Shown here piece by piece: positions 23,442 to 57,939 of a DNA stretch of 64,000 nt. The notes under the pieces are model-generated. The model saw only the letters and a program-made list of their open reading frames with translations, searched no databases and was not told the origin of the DNA. The position numbers and the translations under genes were made by a program. The DNA comes from Macrostomum lignano. Taxonomy: Eukaryota. Positions within the stretch are counted from its first letter, which is position 1. Every line of letters begins with the position of its first letter. The DNA lies in assembly GCA_002269645.1 (NCBI GenBank), contig NIVC01000698.1:76731-140730 (forward strand). Reading direction: 5' to 3'.

Positions 23442-26400
23442 TTACTTGGTCCGAGACCAGGCGGACGGCTTGGCGGTGCCGTTGCCGCTGGCTGGCGGCG
23501 GGGCCGGGCCGCCGTTGCCGCCGCCAATGGACGGGAAATGCTCGCTAGAGGCCAGCTGCTGCTGGTCCCAAGGAGCGTCGCGAACAACAAATCCCGGCCC
23601 GCTGCCGCCATGCTGCTGCTGCTTCTTGCCCTGCTTCTGCGGCTGCTGCTGCTGCTGCTGCTGCTGGGCCTGGGCTGGCTGCTCGGCCTGCTCGCTGACG
23701 GCGTCCGGACGGAGCGAGCGCGGGTCCAGCTCGCCGCGCTCGATCATCCTGTCAATCACTTCGCCGGCCAGGTCAAGCAGGTGATCGCAGGCGTTGTCAA
23801 CATCGGCCTGGGCGCCGCGAACAACAACGGTGTTCTGCGCGTCTGACGGCGCGTTCCGGCCGGGCATGTCGATAGCGACGTCGAATTTCTCCACCAGGGA
23901 GCGCAGATTCTTGCCGCGCTGGCCTAGTTGGATAAATAACAGCAGATGGCGAGGATTAATAGCACGGTAATCTGCAGTAAGCAGCTGCGTAGGCGTAACA
24001 GTAGGAAAAGCTGCTGGCGCCTTATACTCCAGCTAAAGCAGTTCAGGACCAGGGGATTAGGGATCTAAATATAGTAGGAGCCGAGGGATCAACGGGCCAG
24101 ATTAGCCAAGTCGTGCGTCACTTGAAACAGCACGAAAAAAGAACTTATGCACTCACCAATAATGATTGGGTGCACCTGGTGCGTGATGAACAGTTCGGCC
24201 GACACCTGGTTCTCCAGCTTGTCCTTAATGGCCATCAGCTCTTTAGCGGCGGCCTCGGCCTTGTCCTGATAGCCGATTACAACAATTTCGTTAGAGTTTT
24301 TGTCCGGATTCGGTATGTTGACGCGAACTTCGTACTTCTGCTGCAGGGCGCGCACGTTGGCACCCTTGGGCCCGATGATTTCGCGATGATACTGGGCCGG
24401 TATGTCCAGCTTGCATTCGAAGCTGCGAGCCTCCTGGTCGGCTTTCTCGGCCTCCAATTCCTTCAGGCGCTCCTGTAGACGGATTTTGGCAGCTTCCACG
24501 CGTTTCGGAGTACCGTTGAGCACGATGTGCTCAGCCTTGCTCGGGATAGTGATGGCCATGTTCAGCTCGTTAGTCAGGCGCCGGATGCCTTCGCCGTTGC
24601 GGCCGATCAGCTGGCCGTGAAACTCGGACGGGAAGTCCAGCTGCTCCTCGATTGGCACCAGGTCTAGCAGGGCCTGGCGGGCCTTGTCGCACTGCTCCTG
24701 ACGGCCGCTGATGGACACCAGATCCGCCTTGGACGGCGTGGCATCGCCGGAGCCCTCCGGATTGCTGCTGGTCTCCGAGCCGCTGGCTGCGGCGTTTTCG
24801 CCGCCACCGTTGGCCGTGACTTCAGCGGCTGCAGGGGCGGCGTTGGCGTCGCTAGGCTGCGACTGCTGTCTGTTGAACTCGGGGAATTTGATGCTCACGT
24901 CGAATTGGTCGCAGATGTCGCGCACATTGTCGCCGGAGCGGCCAATCACGCTGCGGTGATGAATGGCCGGGATGGCCACCTCGATGGTGACGCGGGCGGC
25001 CAGATCGTCAACAATCTCGCGGATGCGGGCGATGGCGCCCTGGACGCAGTCTTTCGGTCCCTTGACAACAACCCGGGAACTGCCCGGCTCACGCGGGAAG
25101 CTCAACTGAACGCCGCCAAAGTCCTGACTAATCTGGGTGATGTAGAAACCGCGGCGCTCCATGAAAGCCTTGTGCCAGCGGGGATCAACCTCGACAGATT
25201 CCTCGGTGGTGTTCTCCAGGTCCTTCACCTAGTTGGAGAAAGCAAAGTACATTAGTTATTAGGTCTACCGAGGGAGATTCAGAGAGAATCACAAAATTCA
25301 AAATAATAATAATAATAATTATAATATAGTAATAATTGATTACACTTGCCCTAATGGGCAGATGTGCAACCGACAGCTCAGCCGCAGCTATTGCGCGGCG
25401 CATCTGAAGGCTGCGTTCGGCTGTTCAGTCCAAGGACTGGGGGGGGGGGTCGCCACACACCTTCAATTACCCCAGCTAATGCTGGCACCCATTTTACAGC
25501 TGGGGTGAACTGAAGCAATGCAGAGTCAAGTGTCTTGCTCAAGGACACAAATTGTTCCAGTAGGATCGGGAATCGAACCCCCGACTTTTCAGTCGTGAGT
25601 CCGAGGCTCTAAGCACTAGGCTACAACCCCCTGCTAGGCTACATCCCCTAGCTCTCTATAATTCTCTATAAAATATAATCCATCTACTGTGTTTTATACC
25701 CTTAAGAATGGAAGATACTAAAAACAATTTCAATACATCCAACTCGCAATTAGACAAAAAAATGATGGGCCAACCTGTTTCTCGAGCATCTCCTTGGCCT
25801 TAGCAACGGCCTCCTTGCGCCCAATAATGGTGATAATATCGCCGCCCTCTTTGCCGCGCTCGTCCAAGCTAGGGAACACTAGCCTGGCGCCAGTGGCCTT
25901 GCGCAGCTGCTCAGCATTCTGGCCCTGCCGGCCGATGAGGAACGGGTGGAACTCGGGCTTGGCGTGAATCACAGCCTCCTGACTGTCTTCCAATCGCTCC
26001 TCGGCCAGCTGCTGCAGAGCGGCCTTGGCTTTCTTCACCTCGGTTTTGGGGCCGCGCACGGTGACGCGATCGGATGGCTGAGAGGCCGGCGGGAAGTGCA
26101 CGCGTACGCCGCTGTGCTGGTCCTGCAGCTGGCGGATCAGCTTGCCACCGTGGCCGATCAGGCCCTGGTGCAGGCGGGCCGGAATCTCCACGACCTGCGT
26201 AGTGTCACACATGTGATTTATTACTGTGGGTGCAATTTATAGGGGGCGTAGGGGAAATAGGGGAGATTTCCAAAAGGGATGGGGAGATTCTTAAGGGGGA
26301 TGGGAGAGATTCTTTAAGGGGATGGGGAGATTCTTCAAGGGGATGGGGAGATTCTTAAAGGGGATGGGGAGATTCTTAAAGGGGATGGGGAGATTCTTTA

Positions 26401-28869
26401 AAGGGATGAGGAGATTCTTAAAAGAGGACGGGGAGATCCTTTAAAAGGATGGGGGATTTTCAAAAAGCGGATGAGGGAGATTCCTAAAGAGGATGGGGGA
26501 GATTCCTAAAGGGGATGGGGGAGATTACTAAAGGGGATGGGGAGATTCTTAAAGGGGATGGGGGAGATTCCTAAAGGGGATGGGGGAGATTACTAAAGGG
26601 GATGGGGAGATTCCTAAAGGGGATGGGGAGATTCCTAAAGGGGATGGGGGAGATTCCTAAAGGGGATGGGGGAGATTACTAAAGGGGATGGGGAGATTCT
26701 TAAAGGGGATGGGGGAGATTCCTAAAGGGGATGGGGGAGATTACTAAAGGGGATGGGGAGATTCCTAAAGGAGATGGGGGAGATTCCTAAAGGGGATGGG
26801 GGAGATTACTAAAGGGGATGGGGGAGATTACTAAAGGGGATGGGGGAGATTCCTAAAGGGAATGGGGGAGATTACTAAAGGGGATGGGGGAGATTCCTAA
26901 AGGGGATGGGGGAGATTCCTGAAGAGGATGGGGGAGATTCCTAAAGGGGAATAGGGGAGTCTCATAAGGTGAATGGGGGAGATTCGTAAGGGGATGAGTG
27001 AGTTTCTTAAGGGAATAGGGGAGTCTCATAGGGAATGAGGGAGATTTTTAAAGGGGAATAGGGGAGTCTCTCAAGGGGGTGTTAAGGCCAATGGGGGAGA
27101 TGCTTAAAGGGGAATAGGGGAGTCTTTTAAGGGGATGATAATTTGCTATAATGAGAAATTTGAGGAGGGCCAAAGGTAAAAAATACGATTATGGAGCGGG
27201 TAGCAAAAAGGTTGCAGGTAACAGTAAGCGTACCTCTTCCACAATATTAGCGGCCACTTTCTCAATGTCGTTAATTTGTCGGACAGCCTTCTGCACATCT
27301 TTCTGTTTACCGACAACAGTGATGACATCCGATTGGGACCCGGAGTCCGGCATGATAATGCGGGTGTTTGTCTCCTCGCGTATTTTAGCGATAGTCTGGC
27401 CTTTGCGACCAATAATGTCCTTGTGATAGGCCTTGCCAATTCGAACCTTCTCCTCGTAGCTGGAGTCCCTCAAATCGGTGTGCGCTTTCTTTAACAGTTT
27501 CTCAACGTTAGCGAGCTGGTCGCGCGGGCCGCGCAGCTGGACAACATCGCTATTCTGATCGGCGTTGGGGAATTTGATCAGCACATCCGGGTACTTGTCG
27601 CGAATCTCGGCAATCTTGGCGCCGCCCTGGCCGATGAGGGCCCGATGGAACTGGTGCTCAATGATGAGATCCTTGGAGCGCTCGTTGGCCTGCTTGTTGA
27701 CAATCTGCATCAGCTCCTCGCGAGCCAGGTTCACCTTGTCGCGCTCGCCCTCAATTCGGACAACGTCCTCGCCGTCGATGTCGGCTGGCACTCGAACGGT
27801 GCAGCCGGTGGTCTCGCGAATTTTATTGACTGTGCCGCCGCTCTTGCCAATAATATGGCGATGAAACTCGCGCGGCACGGCCACTTCAACCATGGTGTTG
27901 CGCTTCACGTAGTCGTCCACCCAGGCTTTGAGGTTCTTGTGAATTACAACAACCTGGGAAATTTGTTTAGGAGAGGAATCAGGATTTCTATATTTTATTA
28001 ATTACAATAAAATGTTGAAAAACAAGAATATTTGGTTGCATACAGGCGCAATACCTGGCCGATCCGGCCAGCTTGCGAGGGGTCCAGCCAAGGTAAGTCG
28101 CAAAAATGGCCACACGGAAAATACGTAGTACTTATTAGATGATGAGGCATTTAGCCTTAATATTACAGTAAAAGTTACTCCCGCCGTTTACCCAGAGTAA
28201 CGTTAATCACGTTTATCAGGGGGTTGCGCATGCATATTTAGTTGTAAAAATAAAAAAGCCTCACCTGCTCTTTTGGCCCGTCAATCTCGATCTTGTCCTC
28301 GCCGCGCAGGAAATTAATCTGGGCTTTGTGCGTAGGCAGACCGACAACTTTTTGCAGATTCTCGCCGCCGGGACCAATGAGATGCCGGTGCATCCAAGTT
28401 GGCGCCAGTACGGTGCAGGTAGCGTAGGAGTCGGCCTTCTCGTACACCTTGGTCAGAGCAACGCCTAGCTTGGTGCCCTCGCCGCGGAGCACGATTGTCT
28501 CTGATGGATCCTCGGCTGGCGGCACCTCCACGCTGACACCGGTGGCCTCGAGGATCTCTTGAAGGCCGGCGCCGCGCGGACCGATGACGAATTTGTGAAG
28601 CGACTTGGACACCTCGATGTTAACCTGTCAAATGCGGAATCAAAACAAAATTGATGGTGTGACGGAGCAGCAGACGGGTAACGTGACTAACTAGCGGGAA
28701 TTAATTGGAATTTTGAGTGCAATTATGGTGTCTCAAGAGACACAAAGGTTTGTGTCTCTTCTCTCTTCTCCACTTCCCTCTTCTCTCCTCTCCCTTTTCT
28801 TCATTCTCTCCTCTTCTCATCTCCTATTGTATCTCTCCCTTCTTATCGTCTCCTCTCCACTTTATTCCC

Positions 28870-28961
<92 letters not shown>

Positions 28962-31417
28962 CCCGTAAGGGAAAAAGTTTGCCGATCCCTGATGTAGGTA
29001 TATCGTGCGCATATGAAACACATGAAACACTCCCGTTGGAAAAGTTATGCACCTGCAGAGGCACAAAAGGTGAGCGAGGTGCACAAAAGAGGCACTTTGG
29101 TGGCCTATTTCGTGTGTGTTTTGGAAATGCACCTGAGTGCACCTTTTATGCCTAAATGTCACCAATATTTTTGAAAAGAGGCATGAAAGGTGTAAAATCG
29201 GTGAAGTGGTCAGGCAGTAGGTGAATTCTCAATTTTGATTGGCTGCGGCGGTAGGGCAGTAAAGGTGCTGAAGGGGCGCAGAAAGTGCACAAAAGGTGAA
29301 TTAGAGGTGCATAAGGTGTACATGTTGCAGCGTAAATATGTATACAGGTGCATTTCCAAAACACGCTCGAAATAGACCCCAAAAGTGCCTCTTCTGTGCA
29401 CCTCGCTCACCTTTCATGCCTATGCACGAATTAACGCATTAATAATCAGTAACAAAAAATTAACTGAGAGTTACATACTCGTATATTGCACGCACAGATC
29501 AAACATAGAAAAGCTTTATTTACACCTATACTAATTGCTGCTATCCCCTTCCTGATCCTGACTAACCACAAAAGTAAGCATTTCCTGTACTGATAAGTTT
29601 TAATAACTTTCAAATACTCAGGAAAAGTTCCGAAAAGTGATGAAAAGCTTTGAATCTGTTTAAAGAATAATAAGAAAAAGTAGCAAAGAACTTTCGCAAG
29701 TTGGAACGCCCCTTGCATTGCCTCTACACCTAAAGTGCCCACTGTGCACCGTTTGTTCACCTTTTGTGCCTCCAATGCACACTGTGCACCTTTATTCACC
29801 TTCGTGCCTCCAGTGCACACTGTACACTTTTTATGCACCTCCACCACAGCGCACCTTTTTCACCTTTCACTCCACCAATGCCCCCAATTCCTACTTTGTT
29901 CACCTTTTGTGCCTCCAATGCACACTGTGCACCTTTAATACACCAAACTCCCCTATGACACCTGTGCCCCTACCACCTATTTCGTGCCTTAAATTCACCT
30001 TCTGACCCTGCAGAGGCACTCAAGTGAACACGCGGTGCACAAGTGGCACAAAATAGGCATAAAAGAGGCGAAAGTGAGGCAGACGGTGTAAAACTCTTCA
30101 CCTTTCATGCCTACTTTAAAAACTCAAAATTCAACGGGACTCCTCACCGTTTGGCAGCGCTCCAAAGCGTCCTGGTACAGTTGGCGAATAATCCGGCAGG
30201 CATTGACAACGCCGTCTTTCTCGCCTGACACGCGAATTATATCAACATCGTGCTGGGCGTGCACAGGCGGTATGTTGACGCGAACGCCGTTCTCAGTCAT
30301 GATCTTCTCCAGCTGACGGTTGTAGGGCCCGGCAATGAACGGATGGTAAATCTTTGGTATCACGAGGCGCTCGGTGGCCTTCTTGGAGACTTCGTCGTAG
30401 ATGCAGAGAATCTCGTGCCGGGCTTTGTCAATGTTCTCCTTCGGTCCAATTAGGCGAATACTGTTCGGATTAGCATCGTTCTCGCGCGGGATGAAAATTT
30501 CGCAGCCAGACTTTAGTTTGATTTCTTTCAACACGCCGCCCTGCTTGCCGATCAGGTAGCGGTGGAACTCGGCGGGGACGGTCACTTCCGACTGAGGGAC
30601 CGGGTTGAGTTATTGCTGATCAGTTTAATGTTGATATGCTGATAGACTGCTGATGGACTTGGGGAGGGTAGCACACCTGATGATAGACTTGGGAGGGTGG
30701 TACACCTGCTGATAGACTGGGGAAGGGTAGCACACCTGATGATAGACTGGGGGAGGGTAGCACACCAGCTGAAAGATTAGGGTAGGGTAGCACACATACA
30801 AGAAAGGGTAGGTAAGCTAGATAAGTCTAAATAAAGGAAGAAATAGGTGTACAAACCCTAGAAATTCAAAGCAAACAATATCAAGAAGGCAAGCATGCAA
30901 GGCAAGATAAGCCATTCTGTGACAACTCACCTGAGCCTGTGTCTGCAGACGCTTGCGCAACTCGGCAACGGCGTTGCTAACCTTATCGAACCGGCCAGTA
31001 ACCAGCAGAGTGAGGGAGCGGGCCCGAGCGTTGTTGGAAATTTCAATCTTCACTTCGTGCTCCTGCTGCACCTGGGCGCAGATCTTGTTCTGGTCCGAGC
31101 CGAACTCGTTCTGCGTATCCTTGAAGCGCCGCTCCTCAAATGGAATCTCAACAATCTGGTAGCAAGAATATAATTATGAAAGCAAATAATTTAGGCTCAT
31201 ATAAGATTTAAGTTTAAAAAAACCAAGAATTTACCAACAGCTTTACCTGGGTGGTTACCGAAGTTTTAATAGGGGCAATCTTAGAGGGCGCCTTAGGCCA
31301 ATGGTTGCCATTCAGCTCAGTTGACGATCCAGTCGCCAGAGGAGGGAAAGCCTCCGAGTAAAGCTGCACGCTAGCGCTGGCAGTAATGCCATCCTGGTGA
31401 TTGTCCAATGTGTCCAT
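23442..31417 (-). CDS. HDLBP: Vigilin (HDL-binding protein, multi-KH RNA-binding protein), 8 coding exons, ~1297 aa
   Basis: Exons 31417-31247, 31155-30931, 30591-30148, 28624-28265, 27953-27234, 26194-25775, 25228-24157 and 23923-23442, all GT-AG and in frame. Tandem KH domains with IGxxG loops. N-terminal YSEAFPPL...KIAPIKTSVTTQ and C-terminal GFVVRDAPW...EHFPSI match vigilin. Confidence 0.95.
25302..25631 (-). mobile_element. tRNA-derived CORE-type SINE in vigilin intron
   Basis: Minus strand has an A box (TAGCCTAGTGC) and a B box (GGTTCGATTCC), then TGTGTCCTTGAGCAAGACACTT...CTGTAAAATGGG resembling the CORE domain, and an (ATT)n tail. Confidence 0.75.
26270..27130. repeat. G-rich intronic minisatellite, ~22-bp unit GGGGATGGGGGAGATTCCTAAA
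   Basis: About 35 tandem copies in vigilin intron 5. Confidence 0.93.
28039..28236. mobile_element. CATACA-ended MITE, copy 1 (internally deleted, 198 bp)
   Basis: Ends CATACAGGCGCAA...GTTGCGCATGCATA. TSD TTTGGTTG/TTTAGTTG (1 mismatch). Internal similarity to the other four copies. Confidence 0.8.
28740..28959. repeat. Pyrimidine tract plus (CT)n microsatellite
   Basis: Pure CT run at ~28875-28958. Confidence 0.95.
29066..29414. repeat. Foldback structure with 70-bp inverted arms, inside a GTGCAC-motif-rich repeat (~29050-30120)
   Basis: 29066-29135 pairs with 29345-29414 with ~6 mismatches. Confidence 0.85.
30645..30795. repeat. Short intronic tandem repeat, ~30-bp unit GGGAGGGTAGCACACCTGATGATAGACT
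   Basis: About 5 copies in vigilin intron 2. Confidence 0.85.
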
Positions 31418-32661
31418 GATCCTATTAGCAGTGGTCGAGACAATTCCAGTCTGTGTAGGAGTAGCCAAATTCTCTTTTCTTCCTAAAATAATAAATCAGG
31501 TGTGCAATAGTACAAACTTCTGCTTGCGTGTGTAAAGGCGATATATATATTATAGGCACTGGACTCGTTTAAAAAACAGCCGCTTGACAATACAGAAATG
31601 TAATTTTGATATTCAAAAACTTTAGCATAATGCATTGCAAATCACTGCTAAGTATTTAATATTGTTCTTGTAATTTCTACTAACATGTTTTCCTTATGAT
31701 AACCAATACGAAACATGACTTAAACACATAAACAAAGTTAAAATGCAAGACAATAGCTTTTCAATAAAAGATAGGAAGGACAAAAAACAAAGCCTAAAAT
31801 AAGTTCTAAAACCTAAAGATATATTGATAGGGGTAGAAGAATTATGGCCAGATACAATAAACTATGAATACCCATGATAACTTATAGATATATTTATACA
31901 CAACAAATGTAACTCTATAACAAAAACAATGTATAGTTAGTTACAGTTTTTATAAATTACAATTAAACATTTTTCTTAATTTTAAATAAATTAAAAAATT
32001 AAAACATAAATATGATCCAACATATTACAAACATAAGTTTCGTATATTTTATAGCATATTTTGATGTTTCACCTTATATATGACTAATACCCAAAACTTA
32101 TATTTACATAATTCAAAAATATTATATCTTGAAATGCTTACCTATGTCCACTTTTTAATATTTCAAAGAATTTGTACAGCTTTTTATTTTTAAATACCAA
32201 CTTGCCAATTTTGTTTTTCCTCTTTTAAAACGACACTATAAGAATATGACAAGACTATGGAGAACAAATAGATAGAAAAATTTAAACATCTATTTCACTT
32301 TAAATAAGTTTATAATTAACAAATAATTAACAGATTTATTTAAATAAAAATATTTTTCCATATTCAAGAAAATGACAAGTGATGATTTAGAAAGTGATGA
32401 TTTATTTATATTTTGTATAGTATCTCCTCTATTTCTAAAACCTTTGGCTTTGCACAAGAATATATTTTAGCATATCTTTAGAATGTACTATACACAAAGC
32501 TAATTATAAATTTATGTACAAATATATATATTATTGACAATTTCATGACTATATTGTTTTATATAGCTATAATAGCATTAATATTAAATCTAATAAAACA
32601 TAGGCAACTGATTTAAAAAAATAAAGCAATATCTATACCTTTATTATCATACATGCATAAT

Positions 32662-33489: not shown

Positions 33490-34800
33490 CGAGGGTTGTT
33501 CGGAAAGTCCGCAATCAAACGTGTCTAACAGTTTAACGGATTGAACAAATGTAACGCTACTCTTCCTGCTTCTCAATGTAGGCACCCTTGAGACTTATGC
33601 ACTTTTGCCACCTCTCAGGCAACTTCTCGATGCCGGCAGCATAGAAATCGGCAGGTGAACCCCTGACCCACTGGCTGATGGCCGATGCCAGGGTCTGTAG
33701 AGAGCTGTACTGGCGACCTTGGAGGGTTTTTTCATCTCTCCGAACAGCCAGAAGTCACTGAGTGCGAGGTCCGGCGAGTAGGGCGGGTGTGGCAGCACCT
33801 CGAAGCCCAGGTCCGAAATGGCAGCCATAGTTGCCTGGCTGGTGTGCGGCCTGGCATTGTCGTGCTGAAGCAGGATGCCACGGCTCAGCTTGCCACGCCG
33901 CTGGGCCTTGATAGCTTCACGCAACTTCTGCAGGACTTGGATGTAGTACTCACTGTTTATTGTGGCACCACAAGGAAGCCATTCGATGAGCAGAATACCC
34001 TCCTTGTCCCAGAAGACGGTGGCCATTTGCTTGCCAGCTGAAGGTGCAGTCAGGGCCTTGACAGGTGTGGGCTCATGGCTGGCCTTCCACACACTGCTCT
34101 GCATCTTGGACTCTGGCTCACTATAATGAAACCAGGATTCATCCCCAGTCACAATCCGGTCCAAAAAGTTGGGATCACTGCGATATGACTGGAGGAGCTG
34201 CCGACACACCTGGACCCGCTCTCGCTGCTGCTGGTCAGTCAGAAGTTTCAGGACCCAACGAGCAACAACGCGTGACATACCAAGCTCAACCGTCAGGATT
34301 GAATGAATGGCCGTTGATGAGATGCCAGTAATGGTTGACAACTCTCGCACTGTAGCTCGGCGGTCAACATCCAGAGCACGACGCACAAGCTCGATGTTTG
34401 ACCTGTTGACCGTGGTGGCAGGCCGGCCACTCTGTGGAAGGTCATCAACTGTCTCCCAGCCATCTTCAAAACGCTGCACCCACTTGTTGACCATTGTTTT
34501 TGATGGTGCACATTCGCCATACATTGCTTGCAACTCACGAAGAATTTCTGCCTGTCGTTTTCCTTGTTTCCACAAAAACCAAATGACACTTTGCTTTGCT
34601 TCTTCGTTGTTCAGCATAGTGATGGAATTCGTGTGTGACTAAAAACACTGCAAGAAGGAAATTCCTGGCTCAAACAAGACCACTCTTGATTTAAAACATT
34701 CAGGGTATGATATTTGTCTATGGTATAAAGTTTCAAGACAAAGTAGTGACTCAAAAAAAAGATATGCATATTTGATCGCAGACTTTCTGAACAACCCTCG
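33490..34800 (-). mobile_element. Mariner (DD34D) transposon, 1311 bp
   Basis: 30-bp TIRs (CGAGGGTTGTTCGGAAAGTCCGCAATCAAA, 3 mismatches), flanking TA duplication and an internal transposase gene. Confidence 0.95.
33557..34617 (-). pseudogene. Mariner transposase with a 1-nt frameshift near the C-terminus
   Basis: Catalytic motifs TGDESW, HDNARPH and YSPDLALSD give D-34-D spacing. After EMKKP the native tail (LQGRQYSSLQTLASAISQW...RWQKCISLKGAYIEKQEE*) continues in another frame to TAG at 33557-33559. The conserved WVP motif reads WVL. Confidence 0.88.
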
Positions 34801-35266: not shown

Positions 35267-36559
35267 CGAGGGGCACTATTAAAGTTCTGAGCCTGACCAA
35301 GATCTTATAGTGGCAAAGTGTTGAAACTTTAGGCTCTAAAAGTGCCACATGTTAATAGTCTATTGTCAACTTTTCAGAATTTTCTGCATTCCCTAAGTCC
35401 CACTGCACCATTTTATTTCCAGCACCCCATGGCATTTTCTCAAGAATTGAAGCTTGAGCACAGGGCAGTGATTAAATTTCTGACTCTGGAGGGCTCAAAG
35501 CCTGCTGAAATTCAAAGCCGCATGGCTAGTGTGTACGCTGACGCTGCCCCCTCATACGCCACCATAAAGCGCTAGGCAGCCGAGTTCAAGCGTGGCCGCG
35601 ACTCGCTCGAAGATGACCCCCGATGTGGACGACCCCGGACTGCTGTCACTGCCGACAACATCCAGCGCATCCAGGCTCTGGTTGACAGTGACCAGCGGGT
35701 GAAAGTCAGGGAACTTGCGGCAGACACTGGACTCTCTGACCCGCAAGTCATTGAGATCCTGCACCAGCATCTTCATCTGTCCAAGGTTTTTGCCAGATGG
35801 ATCCCACGAATCTTGACAAGGGACCAAAAGACCGCACGGGTGCAGTACTCAAAGCTTGTCCTGGACTCCTACGATCCGGACCCTGCCAACTTTCTGTCCT
35901 GCTGCGTGACCGGGGATGAGACGTGGATCCATCACCACGATCCCGAGTCCAAGCAGGAGTCCAAGCAGTGGCTGCCAGTTGGTTCACCTGCACCACTGAA
36001 GGCACGGACTGCATGCAGTGCGGGCAAGATTATGCTCACCGTCTTCTGGGATGCCAAGGGCCTGCTGCTGCTGGACTTTCTACCGCACAAGCAGACAGTC
36101 ACAGGCGCCTACTACGCTGACCTGATCGCCCGTCTGCGCGAAGCAATCAAGGAAAATAGGCGAGGGATGCTGAGCCAAGGTGTTGTGCTGCTGCACGAAA
36201 ATGCACCGGCCCACACTAGCAGGATTGCCAAGGCTGCTGTCAGTGTCGCAGGGTTTCGAGAGCTGCCGCACCCAGCCTATTCACCAGACCTGGCCCCGAG
36301 CGACTTCCACCTGTTTCCACATCTCAAGCGGGCGCTCCGTGGACAGCGATTTGACACTGATGATGCGCTGAAGGATGCTGCAACTGCTTGGTTTGAGGGC
36401 TGCTCGGTGCAATTCTTCCAGAGTGGCATTGAGGCGCTGCGATCAAGATGCCATAAGTGCATCTTGGTTGGGGGAGACTATGTTGAGAAAAGCTGATCTC
36501 ACTTTGCCCATATCTCCTCTCTTTCATATTAAGGCTCAGAACTTTAATAGTGCCCCTTG
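35267..36559 (+). mobile_element. Mariner (DD34D-spaced) transposon, 1293 bp, second family
   Basis: 28-bp TIRs (CGAGGGGCACTATTAAAGTTCTGAGCCT, 1 mismatch) and flanking TA duplication. Confidence 0.95.
35429..36496 (+). pseudogene. Mariner transposase with one in-frame stop and a catalytic D-to-E change
   Basis: The 355-codon frame is interrupted only by TAG at 35573-35575, where Trp is expected (ATIKR*AAEFKRG). Motifs are TGDETW, LHENAPAH and YSPDLAPSD. Confidence 0.9.
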
Positions 36560-51690: not shown

Positions 51691-52715
51691 CCTATAAAAT
51701 CTAGCATCCTGACTTTCAAAATGACATCTTCAAATTAGACCTTAGAATAGATGCAATGTTGCATCCTAGTGCTAGCAAAAAGCCTTAGTAGACTATGTAC
51801 TAGGGTCTAGGGATACTATATAATATCTTGATTTTCTAAATTGTATCTTAAAATTGGACCTTGAATGTAATTTTGCATCTTAGCATCAGTAGAAAAAACC
51901 TAGTGTATCAATACTAATAAATAAATTTGTAGTAGACAAAACAATTGTATCATGATTTGTCTATTTCCATTTTAGTCTATCAATTAGCAATTACTTTGTC
52001 TGTTGACTGTTGGTAGTCAAATTGGTTATAGAAAAATGGACTAAAACCTTTTTTATTGCCCTATGGTTATATTTAGTCTTAGGTCTAAAGATACCATATG
52101 CAAATCAAAGATGTTGTTTTTGAGGAAATTTCTTGCAAGTAGCTTGCACAGAGTACAAAGTGTTTGTCTAAATCAAAGCATTTATCAATCAATTAGACTA
52201 GTTGGTAAACAATAAAATTCAGTCAACACCACAATTAAATTACAAGCCCACTGCACACAAAGGGTCATAAAACTCCTCCTTAACTAATATATAGTTAAGT
52301 TAAGTTAAGTTATAACTTATATAGTTAAGTTAAACTCCTTAACTAAATATATATTCTACACTGTACATTGGCCAAGGAGAGGCCTAAATAGTTGAACTAA
52401 ACAATTAGATAATAAAATGAAATGCCCATTGAAAGCATAAAAAAATCATTTTCCTAATATTTGACACCCTTTTCATTCAAATTTTTCATCAAAAAAGTGA
52501 TGCATGATTGCTGAAAAATTACAATTTTTAAAAGCTAATTTGAAAAAAATTGGCCAGACAGTTCTCAAAAAGCAACGATAGACAAGCTGACTGAGCATGG
52601 AATCATGTTGTATTTAGATAAGATTTGTATAATACACTTTTACTATTGCATGCTATTGTTCTTACAGTGCTTCTGTTCTCACAACTGATAGCCCACCCAA
52701 GAGCCCTGAATCCTC

Positions 52716-55094
52716 ATGGCCAGCAAAGTTGCAGCAAAATTCGTTTCCTATCGAGTATCTCAGGTTGCCTTAGCCAGCCACTACACTGACAAAGAGCCTG
52801 TTGTGGCTGCTGGCAGCTGGGATGAAGGCCCCAGTAACCGAATTCAACTGCTTGGTTATGGGCCCGAACTGGATGCAGAGGGTAGTCCCCGACTTCTTGC
52901 CGAGCATCGTTGCCATGGAGACGTAATGTGCCTGCGCTTTGATCCAATCTATCAGAATTTGTTTGTTGGCCTCGGCACTGGCGAGCTTGTTGCTATGGCA
53001 ACAACAGCTGAAGAAGAGCCGGGTTCCAACAATGGGAGCGGAGAACGGCAGCGACCCCGGCTGCTGCGGCTGCTGGGCCAGGGCTGGCGGCCGTCCACTG
53101 ACAGCTTCGGCAGTGGCGCCGTGTCCGCGCTGGCCATTCGAGACGGCTGGCACGCCCTGGCAGGCTGGGAGTCCGGCCGCCTCGTCTGCTGCTCCCTGGC
53201 CGTCGAAGTGCCCGACGGCGGCTGCAGCGATGCGGCGACGCTGCGACCGGCCAGCGGTTGCGGCGGCCGCGAGTCGGTGGGGTTGGACTCCTGCTGCGTC
53301 ACCGGAGCTGATTTTATTGACCAGAATGCCGCCTGCACGGTGGGTGGCTCTGGGATTTGAGGACCTCTGTCTGGCTGTGCTGGATGCATGGCATGGTGGG
53401 GAGTAGCGGCTACTGATTGCAGGATGTGTGGGTGGGAACAGCGGCTGCTGATTGCAGGATGTGTCGGTGGGTGAGGAGTAGCCGCTGCTGATTGCAGGAT
53501 GTGTGGGTGGGGAGTAGCGGCTGCTGATTGCAGGATGTGTGGGTGGGGAGTAGCGGCTGCTGATTGCAGGATGTGTGGGTGGGTGGGGAGTAGCCGCCTG
53601 CTGATTGCAGGATGTGTGGGTGGGTGGGGAGTAGCCGCCTGCTGATTGCAGTATGTGTGGGTGGGGAGTAGCCGCCTGCTGATTGCAGGATGTGTGGGTG
53701 GGGAGTAGCGGCTGCTGATTGCAGGATGTGTGGGTGGGTGGGGAGTAGCCGCCTGCTGATTGCAGGATGTGTGGGTGGGTGGGGAGTAGCCGCCTGCTGA
53801 TTGCAGTATGTGTGGGTGGGGAGTAGCCGCCTGCTGATTGCAGGATGTGTGGGTGGGGAATAGCGGCTGCTGATTGCAGGATGTGTGGGTGGGGAGTAGC
53901 GGCTGCTGATTGCAGGATGTGTGGGTGGGGAGTAGCGGCTGCTGATTGCAGGATGTGTGGGTGGGGAATAGCGGCTGCTGATTGCAGGATGTGTGGGTGG
54001 GTGGGGAGTAGCGGCTGCTGATTGCAGGATGTGTGGGTGGGGAATAGCGGCTGCTGATTGCAGGATGTGTGGGGTGGGTGGGGAGTAGCCGCTGCTGATT
54101 GCAGGATGTGTGGGTGGGGAGTAGCGGCTATTGATTGCAGGATGTGTGGGTGGGGAACAGCGGCTGCTGTTTTGCAGTAACTGAGTGAGTCAGACTTGTG
54201 TAATTTTATTTTCAAAACAAGCCTCATCTGTAAAACTGCAGGTAAACAGCATGGGCCAGCTGAAACTATGGGACCTGCGCACGGGGCTTGGCCAATACGA
54301 CAAAGTGCTGACTGTGGCGGGCGATCCAAAGGCCATGCACTGCGCCAGGAGGCACCCCGCTCAGCCGCACCTGGTTGCCACTGGCGCTTCCGGCGGCTGC
54401 CTCTGCCTGTGGGACCTGCGCCAAGAGAAATTTCCTGTTAGCATTGTTGAACTGGATGATGGACACGTCACGCAGGTGAGGATGGGTGCTACAAGTAACT
54501 ATGTGCTGCACACCCTTCACACCAGCCCCATATAGTGTGCTGCACACCCTTCACACCAGCCCCATATAGTGTGCTGCACACCCTTCACACCAGCCCCATA
54601 TAGTGTGCTGCATACCCTTCACACCAGCCCCATATAGTGTGCTGCACACCACACCAGCCCCATATAGTGTGCTGCACAGCCTTCACACCAACCCCATATG
54701 GTGTGCTGTACACCCTTCACACCAGCCCCATATAGTGTGCTGTACACCACACCAGCCCCATATAGTGTGCTGCACACCCTACACCCTTTGCTCGATGCCT
54801 CTATATGCTTTTCTATACTCCCATAGCTGCCCCCGGTCACTGCAGGTGGAGTTCCACCCCGTGCAGGGCGATCTGCTGTTCGTGTCCACCATGGCTGGCC
54901 AGCTGTACGCCATCAGGCTGAGCGACAGCGGCGGCGGCGGTGGCTCGGCGGCTCTGACGGACAATCCGCACCTGACAGCGGTGCTGCCAGCCAGCCAGAA
55001 GCTGCCGGTGAATTCTTTCTGTTTAGGCGAAGATTTTCTATGCGCCGGCACTGAGGATGAACTTTTATATGCCGCCGCAGGCGTTTGCCTGTGA
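52716..55094 (+). CDS. NUP43: Nucleoporin Nup43 (WD40), 3 exons, ~368 aa
   Basis: Exons 52716-53339, 54242-54475 and 54846-55094. Motifs AKFVS, GSWD, HGDVM, TVNSMGQLKLWDLR, HCARRHPAQPHLVATG, WDLRQ, VEFHP and LCAGT match Nup43. AATAAA at 55339-55344. Confidence 0.93.
53395..54170. repeat. Intronic minisatellite (NUP43 intron 1), 36-41-bp unit GGGGAGTAGCGGCTGCTGATTGCAGGATGTGTGGGT
   Basis: About 20 tandem copies. Confidence 0.95.
54500..54785. repeat. Intronic minisatellite (NUP43 intron 2), 34-bp unit GTGTGCTGCACACCCTTCACACCAGCCCCATATA
   Basis: About 8 copies, some with an internal deletion. Confidence 0.93.
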
Positions 55095-55443
55095 GGCTTA
55101 GTTGCAAATTAATGGCCTAGGTAGCGATTGACATGTAGGTGGTTTAAGTAATTAGATTAGTTCATATTTTCAATACCAGTTTCTAATTACTGTGTCTTTT
55201 GCCAAAACTTTAACTAGTTATAATAGAGTAGTGCATTTTTTTCAAACTATTTTTAAAGGTTGAAATCATCTTTGCAGTCTTAATTCAGCATATAAAGTAT
55301 TGAAAGCATGGAAGCATTTATCACCAAGCATCATACGCAATAAAAGTTCTATTTGTGCTTATAAATGTCTATATTATGGTGCCTGCTAAATAAGATTGTC
55401 TACTATTATCATTTCAAGCTTTTTTAAGTCTTGTAGCTTAGGC

Positions 55444-55766
55444 TTCACCCACTTACTCCTTCAGCAGCCTCCACTCACCCACCCAGTCCTTCAGCAGCCT
55501 CTGCTCACCCACCCAGTCCTTCAGCAAGCTTTGCTCACCCACCCAGTCCTTCAGCAGCCTCCACTCACCCACCCAGTCCTTCAGCAAGCTTTGCTCACCC
55601 ACCCAGTCCTTCAGCAGCCTCTGCTCACCCACCCAGTCCTTCAGCAAGCTCTGCTCACCCACCCAGTCCTTCAGCAGCCTCTGCTCACCCACCCAGTCCT
55701 TCAGTAGCCTCTGCTCACCCACCCAGTCCTTCAGCAGCCTCTGCTCACCCACCCAGCCCTTCAGCC
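55444..55766. repeat. 30-bp tandem repeat CACCCACCCAGTCCTTCAGCAGCCTCTGCT between NUP43 and RMND1
   Basis: About 10-11 copies ending ~30 nt before the RMND1 acceptor. Confidence 0.95.
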
Positions 55767-55794
55767 ATCACTCTCCAGTCGCATTTCATTCCAG

Positions 55795-57219
55795 TTGCTC
55801 TCGTCAGTCCGGCTGTGTGGCCGCCTACTGATTGGCACCCGTGGCCGCGGCCTGTGCACAGTCCAGGCCCAGCAGAGGCGCCAGCACCGCAAGCAGCAGC
55901 AGTTCGATGACTCGGCAGCATCAGCGCGGGCAGTGGAGCATCCAATCGAAGCAATGGTTCTCGGCGAACGCTTAGATCTGCGCTCATTGGCTCGAGATTT
56001 AACCCAGCACGGACTTTACCAGCTGGTGCCGCTGCCCGCTGAACTAGCTGGCACAGCTTTGATGGCGACATCGCGCGAGCCGTACACAGTTGGCGGGCAG
56101 AAGCGGGATGCTGTACTGTTTGACAATGGCGCCGTGGTGCTGTGGAATATGTCTGATAAGGAGGCTCAGCAAGCCGTTAAACTGTTTAGCGTGAGTTGGT
56201 TGCTCTCTTTCTGGTTAAGTGTGCGCACTTCAGAGAAATAATTGACTGACTAATCTTCAGCAATTCACTGTCTAATCACTGCTGCCGTTGTCCCAATGCG
56301 TAGGCATACACCACTGAGCCGCACAGCCAGCGCGACATACTGGAGCAGTCTGAAAGCATGGCCTTCGTCGCTGAGGACAGCGTCGGCGCAACCCGAGTCA
56401 GCGAAGATCTCATCCAGCTGCCAGCCGGCCGCGATCCCGACTCGCTGGTGCTGGAAAAATTTGCATTAAGCGACGCTCTGGCCACTTCTACTAGGCTGGG
56501 CCATCTGGAGGCTCAGCTGGATCGGCTGGCTCGTGATCTGGAGCCTTGGATTGCTAGTTTGAAGGTAATTGCGTTTTTTTTTTCTGTAGATTGGCTGGTC
56601 CTACTGCGGCCTCAGAGAACCACTGGGAATGTGGAGAGGCCCAGTGAGACATTAGGATGTGGAGCGGCCCAGTGAGTCATTGGGAATGTACGAGTAGAGC
56701 GGCCGAGTGAGACCGGAATGTAAAGAGGCCCCAAAAAGATAATCCCGTAAAGTTTCGGTGCACCAGAGAACCTCCAAACGATTTCACATTCAGTCTCTAC
56801 TGCAGTTTCCATCAGCCTAGATGCATGTCAATGTCTATAATACTACTGAACTACTCTACTGTAACACCCAGGAAGGCCAGAACGTTCGCGCACCCGGCGA
56901 TCTGATTCTAAGCCGCACCGGGCAGCTCTACCGTCTGAGATTCGCCGCCAGCGTCTGCGACTCGCCGCCAGATTTCTACTGGGAGCGCGAGGACTTGGAG
57001 GCGCTCTACGGCCGCATGTCCAACGTGCTCACCGTAGCCAGGAGAGCTCGCCTGCTCAATACTCGGCTACAATTCTGCCTGGATCTGTGCGACCTATTGC
57101 GCAATCAGAAGCACGAATTGGAGGGCCACAGACTCGAGTGGATAATTATATTTCTTATATTCACAGAGATTATATTTGCTATTGTGCACCTCAGCTTGGA
57201 GTTGCGCCGTTCTGAGTAA
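55795..57219 (+). CDS. RMND1: RMND1 homolog (DUF155/Rmd1 family, mitochondrial translation factor), 3 exons; start codon not encoded in frame
   Basis: Exons 55795-56190, 56304-56564 and 56872-57219. Motifs LFDNGAVVLWN, LEKFALSDALA, PDFYWEREDLE, LNTRL and RLEWIIIFLI. The N-terminus is Arg/Leu-rich and presequence-like. AATAAA at 57297-57302. Confidence 0.88.
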
Positions 57220-57714
57220 CTGTCAGAATTTTCACTTAGCGCTACTGTACGCGACAGAAAAATCATCATTTGTGTCCGTCACCAGATTATGATTCTAATA
57301 AAATTAACTTGGCCTTTTCATCATCATGTGCATTTTTGCCAATTAAAATCAATAGCAAAAAATCAATAGCCATCTTCTCTTTGCCATTATTGTTTGTCAT
57401 ATGGGTAACAAATGAAGGTGATTAACGCTTGCTTATATATGCAGTTCATAACTGGGATTAGTTGATAAATTATATTTTTAGATTTTTTTATTCAAAAAAG
57501 CACATTAAAAGACAGTAAATTTGCAAGTTAATTAATTAATAGAATTTGATGCCATGCATTCACGTGTTAACATTGTAAATACATTGCTGCAATGCTCAGC
57601 ACTTGTACACAGAAACGGAAATAATTGAAATAACCAGAATAAAAACAAAAACACACAATGGTTCCAATTGTCAGTGTTAAGCGCACCTTGCACTATTTAA
57701 AGTTGCCATCTGCA

Positions 57715-57939
57715 TCAGGTGCGCGAAGATTTCTCGCACTCTAGCAGGCACTCTCTGACCATCATGCGGCAGGTGTGAATATTCTTCTTCAGCCGTTCAA
57801 TAGCCATCTTGTTGCCAGCGTAGCTGGGCCGAACGTCGCGGCCCATCTCTTCGATGACCTGCAGCAGCTGGTTGTACTTGCTAGGCGGTTGGTTGCCGGC
57901 CGGCCCGTCCGGCTTCTTGGATGGCGCGGCGAGATCCAT
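57715..57939 (-). CDS. CDK2AP1: CDK2-associated protein 1 (DOC-1)-like, 74 aa from the first ATG
   Basis: SKYNQLLQVIEEMGRDVRPSYAGNKMAIERLKKNIHTCRMMVRECLLECEK matches the CDK2AP core. An acceptor-like CCCGCAG lies 5 nt upstream of the ATG, so an upstream exon cannot be excluded. Confidence 0.9.
   Translation of the reverse strand: MDLAAPSKKPDGPAGNQPPSKYNQLLQVIEEMGRDVRPSYAGNKMAIERLKKNIHTCRMMVRECLLECEKSSRT

What the first reader, a model, noticed from the sequence alone, without database searches (positions are those of the whole stretch)
55095..55960. RMND1 has no start codon of its own: candidate operon gene started by a spliced-leader AUG
Seen: the RMND1 frame is closed by TAG at 55705-55707 and has no ATG until 55954. 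Yet the 53 codons before that ATG encode an Arg/Leu/Ser-rich, presequence-like peptide (LLSSVRLCGRLLIGTRGRGLC) that begins exactly after an acceptor (TTCATTCCAG|TTG, 55795). NUP43's AATAAA is only ~450 bp upstream on the same strand. Known: flatworm spliced leaders end in AUG, which can act as the initiator, and RMND1 is mitochondrial. Inference: NUP43-RMND1 is a dicistronic unit in which trans-splicing supplies Met1 in frame, making mitochondrial targeting dependent on trans-splicing. Alternative: a cis micro-exon ATG|GTGCCT at 55376-55378 with a weak donor.
Basis: partly seen in the sequence, partly recalled or inferred. Interest (0 to 1): 0.78.

Follow-up and report, generated by a model that had tools for sequence, protein, structure and literature searches.

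The report
Spliced leader supplies RMND1 start codon
In the flatworm Macrostomum lignano, the mitochondrial-protein gene RMND1 lies just downstream of NUP43 in one transcription unit and has no start codon of its own, so it most likely takes its first AUG from the trans-spliced leader, a mechanism already documented in flatworms.

Summary
The window is Macrostomum lignano (Mlig_3_7 contig NIVC01000698.1).

- **Frame.** The RMND1 (DUF155) frame runs 53 ATG-less codons from a consensus trans-splice acceptor (TTCCAG|55795) to the first ATG at 55954.
- **The 53 codons are coding.** An orthologue-only HMM aligns from residue 24, adding 10.4 bits (1 of 300 shuffles reaches this). A nearly invariant Ala lies just before the ATG. 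Three genomic paralogues keep the stretch 99% identical without gaps, against 84-94% with gaps for UTRs and introns.
- **Public annotation.** GenBank marks RMND1 as 5'-partial in all three copies, starting 3-6 nt after the acceptor. NUP43 and RMND1 share one transcriptional-unit name (Mlig030699.g4 and g5). The published NUP43 transcript length (1856 nt) equals the distance from the NUP43 acceptor to the RMND1 acceptor.
- **Leader.** The M. lignano spliced leader ends in ATG, which would be in frame.

The mechanism has been known since Cheng et al. 2006, and Macrostomum operons are described. This is a new member of a known kind, of modest interest.

The parts
52662..52667 (+). Trans-splice acceptor TTACAG of NUP43. 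The exon starts at 52668, 48 nt before the NUP43 ATG.
   Evidence: Motif scan. NUP43 genes Mlig030699.g4, Mlig030699.g3 and Mlig017047.g1 are flagged TRANSSPLICED in the PMC5816591 supplement. Here the leader AUG opens only a 7-codon uORF.
52716..55094 (+). NUP43 coding region: exons 52716-53339, 54242-54475 and 54846-55094, stop TGA 55092-55094. This is the upstream cistron.
   Evidence: The exon model reproduces PAA78242.1 exactly. It matches PDB NUP43 chains at E=8e-33 to 8e-29.
55008..55009 (+). GT donor (CCG|GTGAAT) inside the last NUP43 exon, used by the UniProt NUP43-RMND1 fusion models.
   Evidence: The junction ...ASQKLP|LLSSVRL... appears in P0003 and P0159. The fusion drops the NUP43 C-terminus, which aligns with Xenopus Nup43 (domain 3).
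55339..55344 (+). NUP43 poly(A) signal AATAAA in its 3'UTR.
   Evidence: Sequence. It is conserved in paralogues L001 and L002. The Mlig017047.g1 length of 1494 nt places the paralogue's transcript end about 345 nt after the stop.
55376..55378 (+). It lies inside the NUP43 3'UTR.
   Evidence: Present and conserved in the paralogues. No annotated transcript uses it, and the RMND1 CDS is 5'-partial in all copies.
55445..55765 (+). Intercistronic 30-bp tandem repeat, 10.7 copies, pyrimidine-rich. Each unit contains CTTCAG.
   Evidence: TRF. The paralogues carry about 30 copies. All the unit acceptor motifs are in the RMND1 frame.
55789..55794 (+). Trans-splice acceptor TTCCAG of RMND1. The leader would be joined to 55795.
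   Evidence: It fits [T/C]TNCAG and is identical in the three loci. The GenBank CDS starts 3-6 nt downstream. The NUP43 transcript length of 1856 nt ends here.
55795..55953 (+). 53 ATG-less codons of RMND1: an Arg-rich N-terminal extension, the conserved basic patch and Ala54. They are read from the leader's AUG.
   Evidence: Frame and sequence. HMM extension of +10.4 bits, reached by 1 of 300 shuffles. Nearly invariant A54. 99.4% and 98.7% paralogue identity without gaps.
55954..56190 (+). Rest of RMND1 exon 1, starting at the first genomic in-frame ATG (context GCAATGG).
   Evidence: The model matches PAA78243.1.
56304..56564 (+). RMND1 exon 2.
   Evidence: The spliced translation is identical to PAA78243.1. 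DUF155 spans residues 108-283.
56872..57219 (+). RMND1 exon 3 with the C-terminal hydrophobic segment and stop TAA 57217-57219.
57297..57302 (+). RMND1 poly(A) signal AATAAA.
   Evidence: Sequence.

Best explanation
NUP43 and RMND1 of Macrostomum lignano are transcribed as one precursor. NUP43 is cleaved and polyadenylated after its AATAAA. The downstream RMND1 cistron is released by trans-splicing of the 35-nt spliced leader (…TTATTGCATG) to the acceptor TTCCAG|55795. The leader's terminal AUG then becomes codon 1, in frame with 53 genomic codons that carry no ATG. These encode an Arg-rich, acid-free N-terminus (a probable mitochondrial presequence), the conserved basic patch, and the first residues of the DUF155 domain.

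Shown here: the gene structure, the frame, the coding nature of the extension, its conservation in three paralogous loci, the shared transcriptional unit, and a mature 5' end at or within 6 nt of the acceptor in the public annotation.

Inferred: that the leader is joined exactly at 55795, that ribosomes start at the leader's AUG, and that the extension directs mitochondrial import.
For: - **Organism and leader.**; the leader sequence ending in ATG is given in PMC8629364.
- **Acceptor.** It fits the published motif [T/C]TNCAG and is in frame with no stop.
- **No in-frame ATG upstream.** None for 90 nt in the window, and none for 970-1030 nt in the paralogues.
- **Annotation.** GenBank PAA78243.1, PAA78699.1 and PAA72927.1 are annotated 'partial' and begin SSVRL or LSSVRL, 6 or 3 nt after the AG.
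- **One transcriptional unit.** The Mlig030699 prefix is shared by g4 (NUP43) and g5 (RMND1). The prefix names transcriptional-unit clusters, and the TBONE pipeline cuts those units at leader-read peaks.
- **Length arithmetic.** NUP43 transcript length 1856 nt = 48 + 1107 + 701, ending at 55795 ±1; any offset common to both cut sites cancels.
- **Operon spacing.** The intergenic distance minus the tandem repeat is roughly 40-110 nt, the operon mode.
- **The extension is coding.** The orthologue HMM aligns from residue 24, +10.4 bits, reached by 1 of 300 shuffles. HMMER alignments to many orthologues start at query residues 17-29. A54 is nearly invariant. Paralogue identity is 99.4% and 98.7% without gaps, against 84-94% with gaps in non-coding parts.
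- **Presequence composition.** The first 37 residues are net +8 with no acidic residue.
- **Precedent.** The flatworm leader AUG serves as initiator in S. mansoni (Cheng et al. 2006, as cited in PMC9851317). A Macrostomum genome paper states that the leader likely contains the final ATG as the translation start codon (PMC10468722).
Against: - I saw no leader-containing read or cDNA. The TRANSSPLICED flag was found for NUP43 but not for RMND1, because the supplementary table held is restricted or truncated.
- The annotated CDS starts 3-6 nt after the acceptor rather than at it, so the junction is known only to within a few nucleotides.
- A second motif match (CTCCAG|55779) lies 16 nt upstream and would put the leader AUG out of frame. 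The repeat units offer further in-frame acceptors.
- The leader AUG has a weak context (T at -3, T at +4), whereas ATG 55954 has G at -3 and G at +4, so some initiation at 55954 is possible.
- The codon-usage score of the extension is neutral (-0.4 bits), and the amphipathic moment is not above shuffles.
- No dedicated targeting predictor was available.
Confidence: 0.8

Rival explanations
1. Translation starts at the genomic ATG 55954, and the 159 nt upstream are merely a leader or 5'UTR. On this view RMND1 does have its own start codon, and the Arg-rich peptide is not made or not needed.
For: ATG 55954 has the better initiation context (GCAATGG), while the leader AUG context is weak. The codon-usage score of the upstream 159 nt is neutral and the amphipathic moment is not significant.
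Against: - Any leader AUG joined at 55795 is the first AUG of the mRNA and is in frame without a stop.
- The nearly invariant Ala54 and the conserved basic patch lie upstream of the ATG.
- The orthologue HMM gains 10.4 bits from the extension, reached by 1 of 300 shuffles.
- All 19 aligned orthologues have at least about 50 residues before this point.
- The stretch evolves like coding sequence between paralogues.
- A protein starting at M55 would be net -1 over its first 30 residues and would lack any presequence.
Confidence: 0.08
2. RMND1 is made as the C-terminal half of a NUP43-RMND1 fusion protein. A donor inside the last NUP43 exon (CCG|GT, 55008) is cis-spliced to the acceptor at 55795, as modelled in UniProt A0A1I8H443, A0A1I8FYD7 and A0A1I8HCT1.
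For: Three in-frame fusion models of 672-674 aa exist in UniProt. The donor is GTGAA-like. Sharing of acceptors between cis- and trans-splicing is reported in parasitic flatworms (PMC12582326).
Against: - The transcript-based Mlig_3_7 annotation gives two separate genes in all three loci.
- The fusion deletes the conserved NUP43 C-terminal strands (LPVNSF…GTEDELLY), which align with Xenopus Nup43.
- It buries the presequence-like peptide internally.
- NUP43 has its own stop and AATAAA.
- A gene predictor faced with an ATG-less downstream ORF would be expected to produce exactly such a merge.
Confidence: 0.05
3. RMND1 has a cis-spliced upstream ATG exon (for example ATG|GTGCCT at 55376) or its own promoter between the two genes, so it is an independent gene and not operon-dependent.
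For: The ATG|GT at 55376 exists and is conserved in the paralogues. A TATAAA lies at about 55359 in the window.
Against: - The micro-exon lies within the NUP43 3'UTR, upstream of the transcript end inferred for the paralogue.
- The donor GTGCCT departs from GT[G/A]AG.
- The TATAAA is TATAAT in both paralogues.
- RNA-seq-based models in three loci found no such exon and left the CDS 5'-partial.
- The NUP43 transcript length runs to the RMND1 acceptor.
Confidence: 0.04

Closest known systems
Schistosoma mansoni mRNAs that use the spliced leader's 3'-terminal AUG as initiator methionine (Cheng, Cohen, Ndegwa and Davis, J Biol Chem 2006; cited in PMC9851317, PMC12582326, PMC5832876)
   Same: A flatworm leader ending in AUG is joined in frame to an ORF that lacks its own AUG, so the leader supplies Met1. 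According to PMC9851317, the AUG is in frame in 28% of trans-spliced S. mansoni transcripts and more than 40 cDNAs need it.
   Different: This is a different species (a free-living macrostomorph) and a different gene. Here the leader-dependent part is a probable mitochondrial presequence of the downstream gene of an operon. There is no experimental translation test for this case.
Macrostomum lignano operons and TBONE-defined trans-spliced genes (Wudarski et al. 2017, PMC5730564; Ustyantsev and Berezikov 2021, PMC8629364)
   Same: Two genes on the same strand, a downstream gene with a [T/C]TNCAG acceptor, a repeat-filled intergenic spacer whose repeat-adjusted length is about 100 nt, and one transcriptional-unit name for both genes.
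   Different: Those papers do not discuss dependence on the leader AUG for the start codon, and they do not name this gene pair in the text I could read.
slORFs: ORFs created by start codons within spliced leaders (slORFfinder, PMC9851317)
   Same: The start codon is donated by the leader sequence.
   Different: slORFs in that work were detected by ribosome footprints in nematodes, trypanosomes and Oikopleura, mostly through near-cognate NUG codons. Here it is a canonical AUG and the main conserved ORF of the gene.
Dual targeting of Trypanosoma brucei isoleucyl-tRNA synthetase through alternative trans-splicing (PMC3273800)
   Same: The choice of trans-splice site decides whether a mitochondrial presequence is translated.
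   Different: In T. brucei the AUGs are genomic and the leader gives none. Here the single in-frame AUG upstream of the presequence comes from the leader.

Membership tests
Leader-AUG-initiated flatworm mRNA (Cheng et al. 2006 type) | The species' spliced leader ends in AUG immediately before its donor. | tested here: met
   The M. lignano leader is CGGTCTCTTACTGCGAAGACTCAATTTATTGCATG, followed by GTAAG in the SL RNA gene (PMC8629364). The window is M. lignano.
Leader-AUG-initiated flatworm mRNA (Cheng et al. 2006 type) | The leader AUG is in frame with the conserved ORF, with no stop between them. | tested here: met
   The exon start at 55795 is in the frame of ATG 55954 and the DUF155 domain, with 53 sense codons between. 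The same holds in L001 and L002.
Leader-AUG-initiated flatworm mRNA (Cheng et al. 2006 type) | There is no genomic AUG upstream of sequence that must be coding. | tested here: met
   There is no in-frame ATG from the upstream stop to 55954 in three loci. Conserved A54 and the basic patch lie upstream of 55954.
Leader-AUG-initiated flatworm mRNA (Cheng et al. 2006 type) | The leader is physically joined at that acceptor, shown by SL-containing reads or cDNA. | not testable with these tools
   No RNA reads were accessible, and exact look-ups of SL-AUG-initiated protein variants found nothing. The indirect support is the 5'-partial CDS starting 3-6 nt after the AG in three loci and the NUP43 transcript length ending at 55795.
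Leader-AUG-initiated flatworm mRNA (Cheng et al. 2006 type) | Translation initiates at the leader AUG. | not testable with these tools
   This needs ribosome profiling, N-terminal proteomics or reporter assays. The sequence context of the leader AUG is weak.
M. lignano operon (Ustyantsev and Berezikov 2021 criteria) | Adjacent genes on the same strand with a repeat-adjusted intergenic distance below 1 kb. | tested here: met
   The NUP43 stop is at 55094 and the RMND1 acceptor at 55794. The spacer after the poly(A) signal is about 450 nt, of which 321 nt is tandem repeat. The criterion is given.
M. lignano operon (Ustyantsev and Berezikov 2021 criteria) | The downstream gene is SL trans-spliced. 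| tested here: inconclusive
   The motif fits and the annotation boundaries fit. However, the TRANSSPLICED flag for Mlig030699.g5 was not found in the supplementary text that is held.
M. lignano operon (Ustyantsev and Berezikov 2021 criteria) | Both genes lie on one precursor transcript. | tested here: met
   Locus tags BOX15_Mlig030699g4 (NUP43) and BOX15_Mlig030699g5 (RMND1) share the transcriptional-unit prefix. The naming rule is in PMC5730564. The 1856-nt length arithmetic agrees. This evidence is indirect, taken from published annotation.
RMND1 / DUF155 (PF02582) | A DUF155 domain scoring above Pfam's gathering score. | tested here: met
   111.8 bits against a cut-off of 27, E=5.2e-32, residues 108-283. 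There are 693 relatives at E<=1e-10.
RMND1 / DUF155 (PF02582) | An N-terminal extension before the domain and a C-terminal hydrophobic segment, as in animal orthologues. | tested here: met
   The alignment with 19 orthologues shows that all have at least about 50 residues before the first conserved strand and share the LEWxIIxLIxxE segment.
Mitochondrial matrix-targeting presequence | A positively charged, acid-free N-terminus rich in Arg, Leu and Ser. | tested here: met
   The first 37 residues hold 7 R, 1 K and 0 D/E, net +8. From M55 onward the first 30 residues are net -1.
Mitochondrial matrix-targeting presequence | An amphipathic helix, or a positive call by a dedicated predictor. | tested here: inconclusive
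   The maximum hydrophobic moment of 0.38 is reached by 1369 of 2000 shuffles. TargetP and MitoFates were not available.

The most novel reading that the evidence does not exclude
The weak-context leader AUG and the strong-context genomic AUG at 55954, together with a variable array of in-frame acceptor motifs in the 30-bp intercistronic repeat, could make RMND1 a tunable gene. The choice of trans-splice site and leaky scanning would set the ratio of mitochondrially imported, N-terminally extended and presequence-less isoforms. Import would then depend on trans-splicing efficiency and on repeat copy number, which differs three-fold between paralogues.
Probability: 0.1. Interest if true: 0.5.

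Novelty: new member of a known kind. Interest (0 to 1): 0.3.

Why it matters
It gives a concrete, checkable example in a transgenic flatworm model of a conserved mitochondrial protein whose start codon, and probably its import signal, exist only after trans-splicing.

In practice it explains two annotation problems: why GenBank lists this protein as 'partial', and why UniProt holds NUP43-RMND1 fusion models. It argues that Macrostomum annotations should add the leader's ATG back at trans-splice sites. It does not change what is known about the mechanism.

Tried and rejected
- **Word-indexed protein searches.** Two runs with the RMND1 model returned nothing, or only two distant DUF155 proteins. 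The exhaustive HMMER search was needed to find the M. lignano entries.
- **Exact look-ups.** Six N-terminal variants (leader-AUG start, M55 start, TTG start, open 5' end with the translated leader, and others) were not in the collection. The fusion protein P0003 has no encoding contig on record.
- **Leader in the window.** The leader sequence does not occur in the window, even allowing 3 mismatches.
- **Supplementary tables.** I looked for a TRANSSPLICED flag on Mlig030699.g5 or RMND1. PMC8629364 has no supplements held, PMC5730564 gave none, and PMC5816591 lists only the NUP43 copies.
- **Cheng et al. 2006** is not held, so it is cited through other papers.
- **Codon-usage log-likelihood** of the extension was neutral, and the non-coding controls were noisy, so I gave it no weight.
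- **Hydrophobic-moment test** was not significant.
- **PDB sequence search** with RMND1 found no solved relative.
- **Phytochelatin synthase of S. mansoni** was checked as a recalled precedent for leader-dependent mitochondrial targeting and rejected, because that paper found no trans-splicing.
Full report
**What is in the sequence.**
- In the frame of the downstream ORF, a TAG sits at 55705-55707 and the first ATG at 55954-55956.
- An AG at 55793-55794 (TTCATTCCAG|TTG) opens an exon at 55795 in the same frame.
- The 53 codons between read LLSSVRLCGRLLIGTRGRGLCTVQAQQRRQHRKQQQFDDSAASARAVEHPIEA.
- With exons 55795-56190, 56304-56564 and 56872-57219, the ORF gives a 334-residue protein with a DUF155 domain (Pfam PF02582, 111.8 bits, E=5.2e-32, residues 108-283).
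- The upstream gene on the same strand (exons 52716-53339, 54242-54475, 54846-55094) is NUP43. It matches Xenopus and human NUP43 chains in the PDB at E=8e-33 to 8e-29.
- The NUP43 stop is TGA 55092-55094, with AATAAA at 55339-55344.
- Between the genes lies a 30-bp tandem repeat (55445-55765, 10.7 copies).

**Whose genome it is.** Two word-indexed protein searches failed. An exhaustive HMMER search then found a 672-residue protein that is essentially identical (reported as 100%) over all 334 residues. Its cluster holds only Macrostomum lignano entries:
- GenBank PAA78242.1 (NUP43, BOX15_Mlig030699g4).
- GenBank PAA78243.1 (RMND1, BOX15_Mlig030699g5, 'partial'), identical to my model from residue 3 onward.
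- Two further pairs of paralogues.
- UniProt fusion models.

Looking up the encoding contigs returned three loci of assembly GCA_002269645.1. L003 (NIVC01000698.1) is base-for-base identical to the window over 18,200 compared bases.

**Are the 53 codons coding?** Three independent lines say yes.
1. In an alignment with 19 orthologues, the first conserved strand (V-x-A-Y-A-x-x-E-E-x-x-L) aligns with IEAMVLGERLDL. The nearly invariant Ala is residue 54, immediately before the genomic ATG. A basic patch (consensus KRxxRKK) aligns with QQRRQHRKQQ.
2. An HMM built only from the orthologues aligns to the window protein from residue 24. It scores 267.9 bits, against 257.5 bits for the protein starting at M55. 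Only 1 of 300 shuffles of the extension reaches this. Many pairwise HMMER alignments also begin at query residues 17-29.
3. Between the window and the two paralogous loci, the 159 nt are 99.4% and 98.7% identical with no gaps. This is like the flanking coding exons (98-99.4%). It is unlike the NUP43 3'UTR (89.6-93.9%, gapped), RMND1 intron 1 (83.6%, gapped) and the RMND1 3'UTR (about 92.5%, gapped).

A codon-usage score was neutral and I give it no weight.

**Is there any other start codon?** None was found.
- All three loci keep the acceptor, the 53 ATG-less codons and then the ATG. The only differences are Q37H and one synonymous change.
- In L001 and L002 the frame is open for 970-1030 nt upstream, through the whole repeat array, and still contains no ATG.
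But it lies inside the NUP43 3'UTR, has a poor donor relative to GT[G/A]AG, and is not used in any annotated transcript.

**Evidence for trans-splicing at 55795 and for a shared transcript.**
- The M. lignano leader is CGGTCTCTTACTGCGAAGACTCAATTTATTGCATG. The motif at trans-splice acceptors is [T/C]TNCAG (PMC8629364), and TTCCAG at 55789-55794 fits it.
- The Mlig_3_7 annotation was built from RNA-seq. Transcriptional units were cut into genes by the TBONE pipeline at peaks of leader-containing reads and at poly(A) sites. Names share a prefix when they belong to one cluster of transcriptional units (PMC5730564).
- In the window, NUP43 is Mlig030699.g4 and RMND1 is Mlig030699.g5.
- The RMND1 CDS is 5'-partial in all three loci and begins 6, 6 and 3 nt after the AG. 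The next AG downstream is out of frame and lies beyond the annotated start. The next AG upstream (exon start 55779) would have added residues that the annotation lacks.
- A supplementary table of PMC5816591 lists Mlig030699.g4 as NUP43, TRANSSPLICED, length 1856 nt. NUP43 has a TTACAG acceptor 48 nt before its ATG (exon start 52668). The sum 48 + 1107 + 701 = 1856 puts the 3' end of that transcript at 55795 ±1, which is the RMND1 acceptor. Any offset common to both cut sites cancels.
- The paralogue Mlig017047.g1 (1494 nt) instead ends about 345 nt after the stop, at the edge of its three-fold longer repeat array. This fits the published remark that units tend to break in repeat-rich operon spacers.
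- Subtracting the repeat, the spacer is roughly 40-110 nt, matching the published operon mode of about 100 nt.

**How it most likely works.** One precursor carries both genes. NUP43 is polyadenylated, and the leader is spliced to 55795. The leader's AUG is then the first AUG of the RMND1 mRNA and is in frame, so scanning ribosomes begin there and make MLLSSVRLCGRLLIGTRGRGLCTV…. The first 37 residues have 7 Arg, 1 Lys and no acidic residue (net +8). A protein starting at M55 would be net -1 over its first 30 residues. This matches the composition of a matrix-targeting presequence, and RMND1 orthologues all have N-terminal extensions. The amphipathic-moment test was not significant, and I had no targeting predictor. 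Import is therefore inferred from family knowledge and composition only.

**Caveats.**
- I saw no leader-junction read.
- A CTCCAG|55779 motif 16 nt upstream would put the leader AUG out of frame. It would open a 43-codon upstream ORF.
- The repeat units carry CTTCAG motifs that are all in frame.
- The leader AUG has a weak context, whereas ATG 55954 has G at -3 and +4. An out-of-frame ATG at 55907 lies between them. Some leaky scanning to a presequence-less product cannot be excluded.

**Rivals.**
- *Initiation only at 55954.* This is contradicted by the conserved residues upstream and by the coding-like conservation.
- *The UniProt NUP43-RMND1 fusions* (junction …ASQKLP|LLSSVRL…). These use a donor inside the last NUP43 exon. 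They delete the C-terminal strands that align with Xenopus Nup43. They look like what a gene predictor does with an ATG-less ORF, and the transcript-based annotation keeps the genes apart.
- *An independent promoter or a cis ATG exon.* This has no support in three loci.

**Comparison with what is known.** The leader's 3'-terminal AUG acting as initiator methionine is established for flatworms. According to PMC9851317, Cheng et al. 2006 found it in frame in 28% of trans-spliced S. mansoni transcripts and required by more than 40 cDNAs. PMC12582326 and PMC5832876 repeat the point. [quoted passage not shown] Macrostomum operons are described (PMC8629364). Trans-splice-site choice controlling a mitochondrial presequence is known from the T. 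brucei isoleucyl-tRNA synthetase (PMC3273800), although there the AUGs are genomic. I recalled the S. mansoni phytochelatin synthase as a possible precedent, but the paper reports no trans-splicing.

**Verdict.** It is a new member of a known kind. Its main practical value is for annotation: the 'partial' GenBank proteins and the fused UniProt models are both consequences of the missing genomic ATG. Interest is 0.3.

Noticed in passing
window 52662-52716: NUP43 is itself SL trans-spliced (flagged TRANSSPLICED and neoblast-enriched in the PMC5816591 supplement). Its acceptor is TTACAG|52668. Here the leader AUG opens only a 7-codon uORF (MCFCSHN*) that ends 27 nt before the real ATG at 52716. 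So the two genes of one unit use the leader AUG in opposite ways.
   Followed up: partly
window 55445-55765; L001 about 9060-9965; L002 about 9020-9965: The intercistronic 30-bp repeat varies from 10.7 copies (window) to about 30 copies (paralogues). Every unit carries a CTTCAG match to the trans-splice acceptor motif. All are in the RMND1 frame, because the period is 10 codons. The frame is stop-free through the whole array in L001 and L002, and a single CAG>TAG change closes it in the window.
   Followed up: partly
window 55008-55795 (junction of UniProt A0A1I8H443, A0A1I8FYD7, A0A1I8HCT1): Public UniProt entries model NUP43 and RMND1 as one 672-674-aa fusion protein, dropping the conserved NUP43 C-terminus. 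This is probably an annotation artefact caused by the ATG-less RMND1. GenBank instead lists RMND1 as 'partial'.
   Followed up: partly
window about 24092-31495, minus strand: A large multi-KH-domain, vigilin-like gene (KH_1 E=6e-48 and 2.7e-45; KH_Vigilin E=3e-12 on two exon ORFs).
   Followed up: partly
window 33598-34638 (-) and 35576-36493 (+): Two long ORFs of mariner/Mos1-type transposases (Transposase_1 E=2.5e-20 and 1.3e-22; HTH_48 in the first), lying head to head about 1 kb apart.
   Followed up: partly
window 57715-57939, minus strand: A 74-aa CDK2AP-domain gene (PF09806, E=5e-15) converges on the RMND1 3' end. The order NUP43 > RMND1 < CDK2AP is kept in all three paralogous loci.
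   Followed up: partly
window 53395-54177 and 54502-54784: Both NUP43 introns are largely filled by tandem repeats (36-bp unit x 20.8 copies and 34-bp unit x 8.6 copies). This is typical of the repeat-rich M. lignano genome.
   Followed up: no
window 52637-52651: TATTGCATG, identical to the last 9 nt of the spliced leader, lies about 20 nt upstream of the NUP43 acceptor. About 0.5 such matches are expected by chance in 64 kb, so it is probably coincidence.
   Followed up: no
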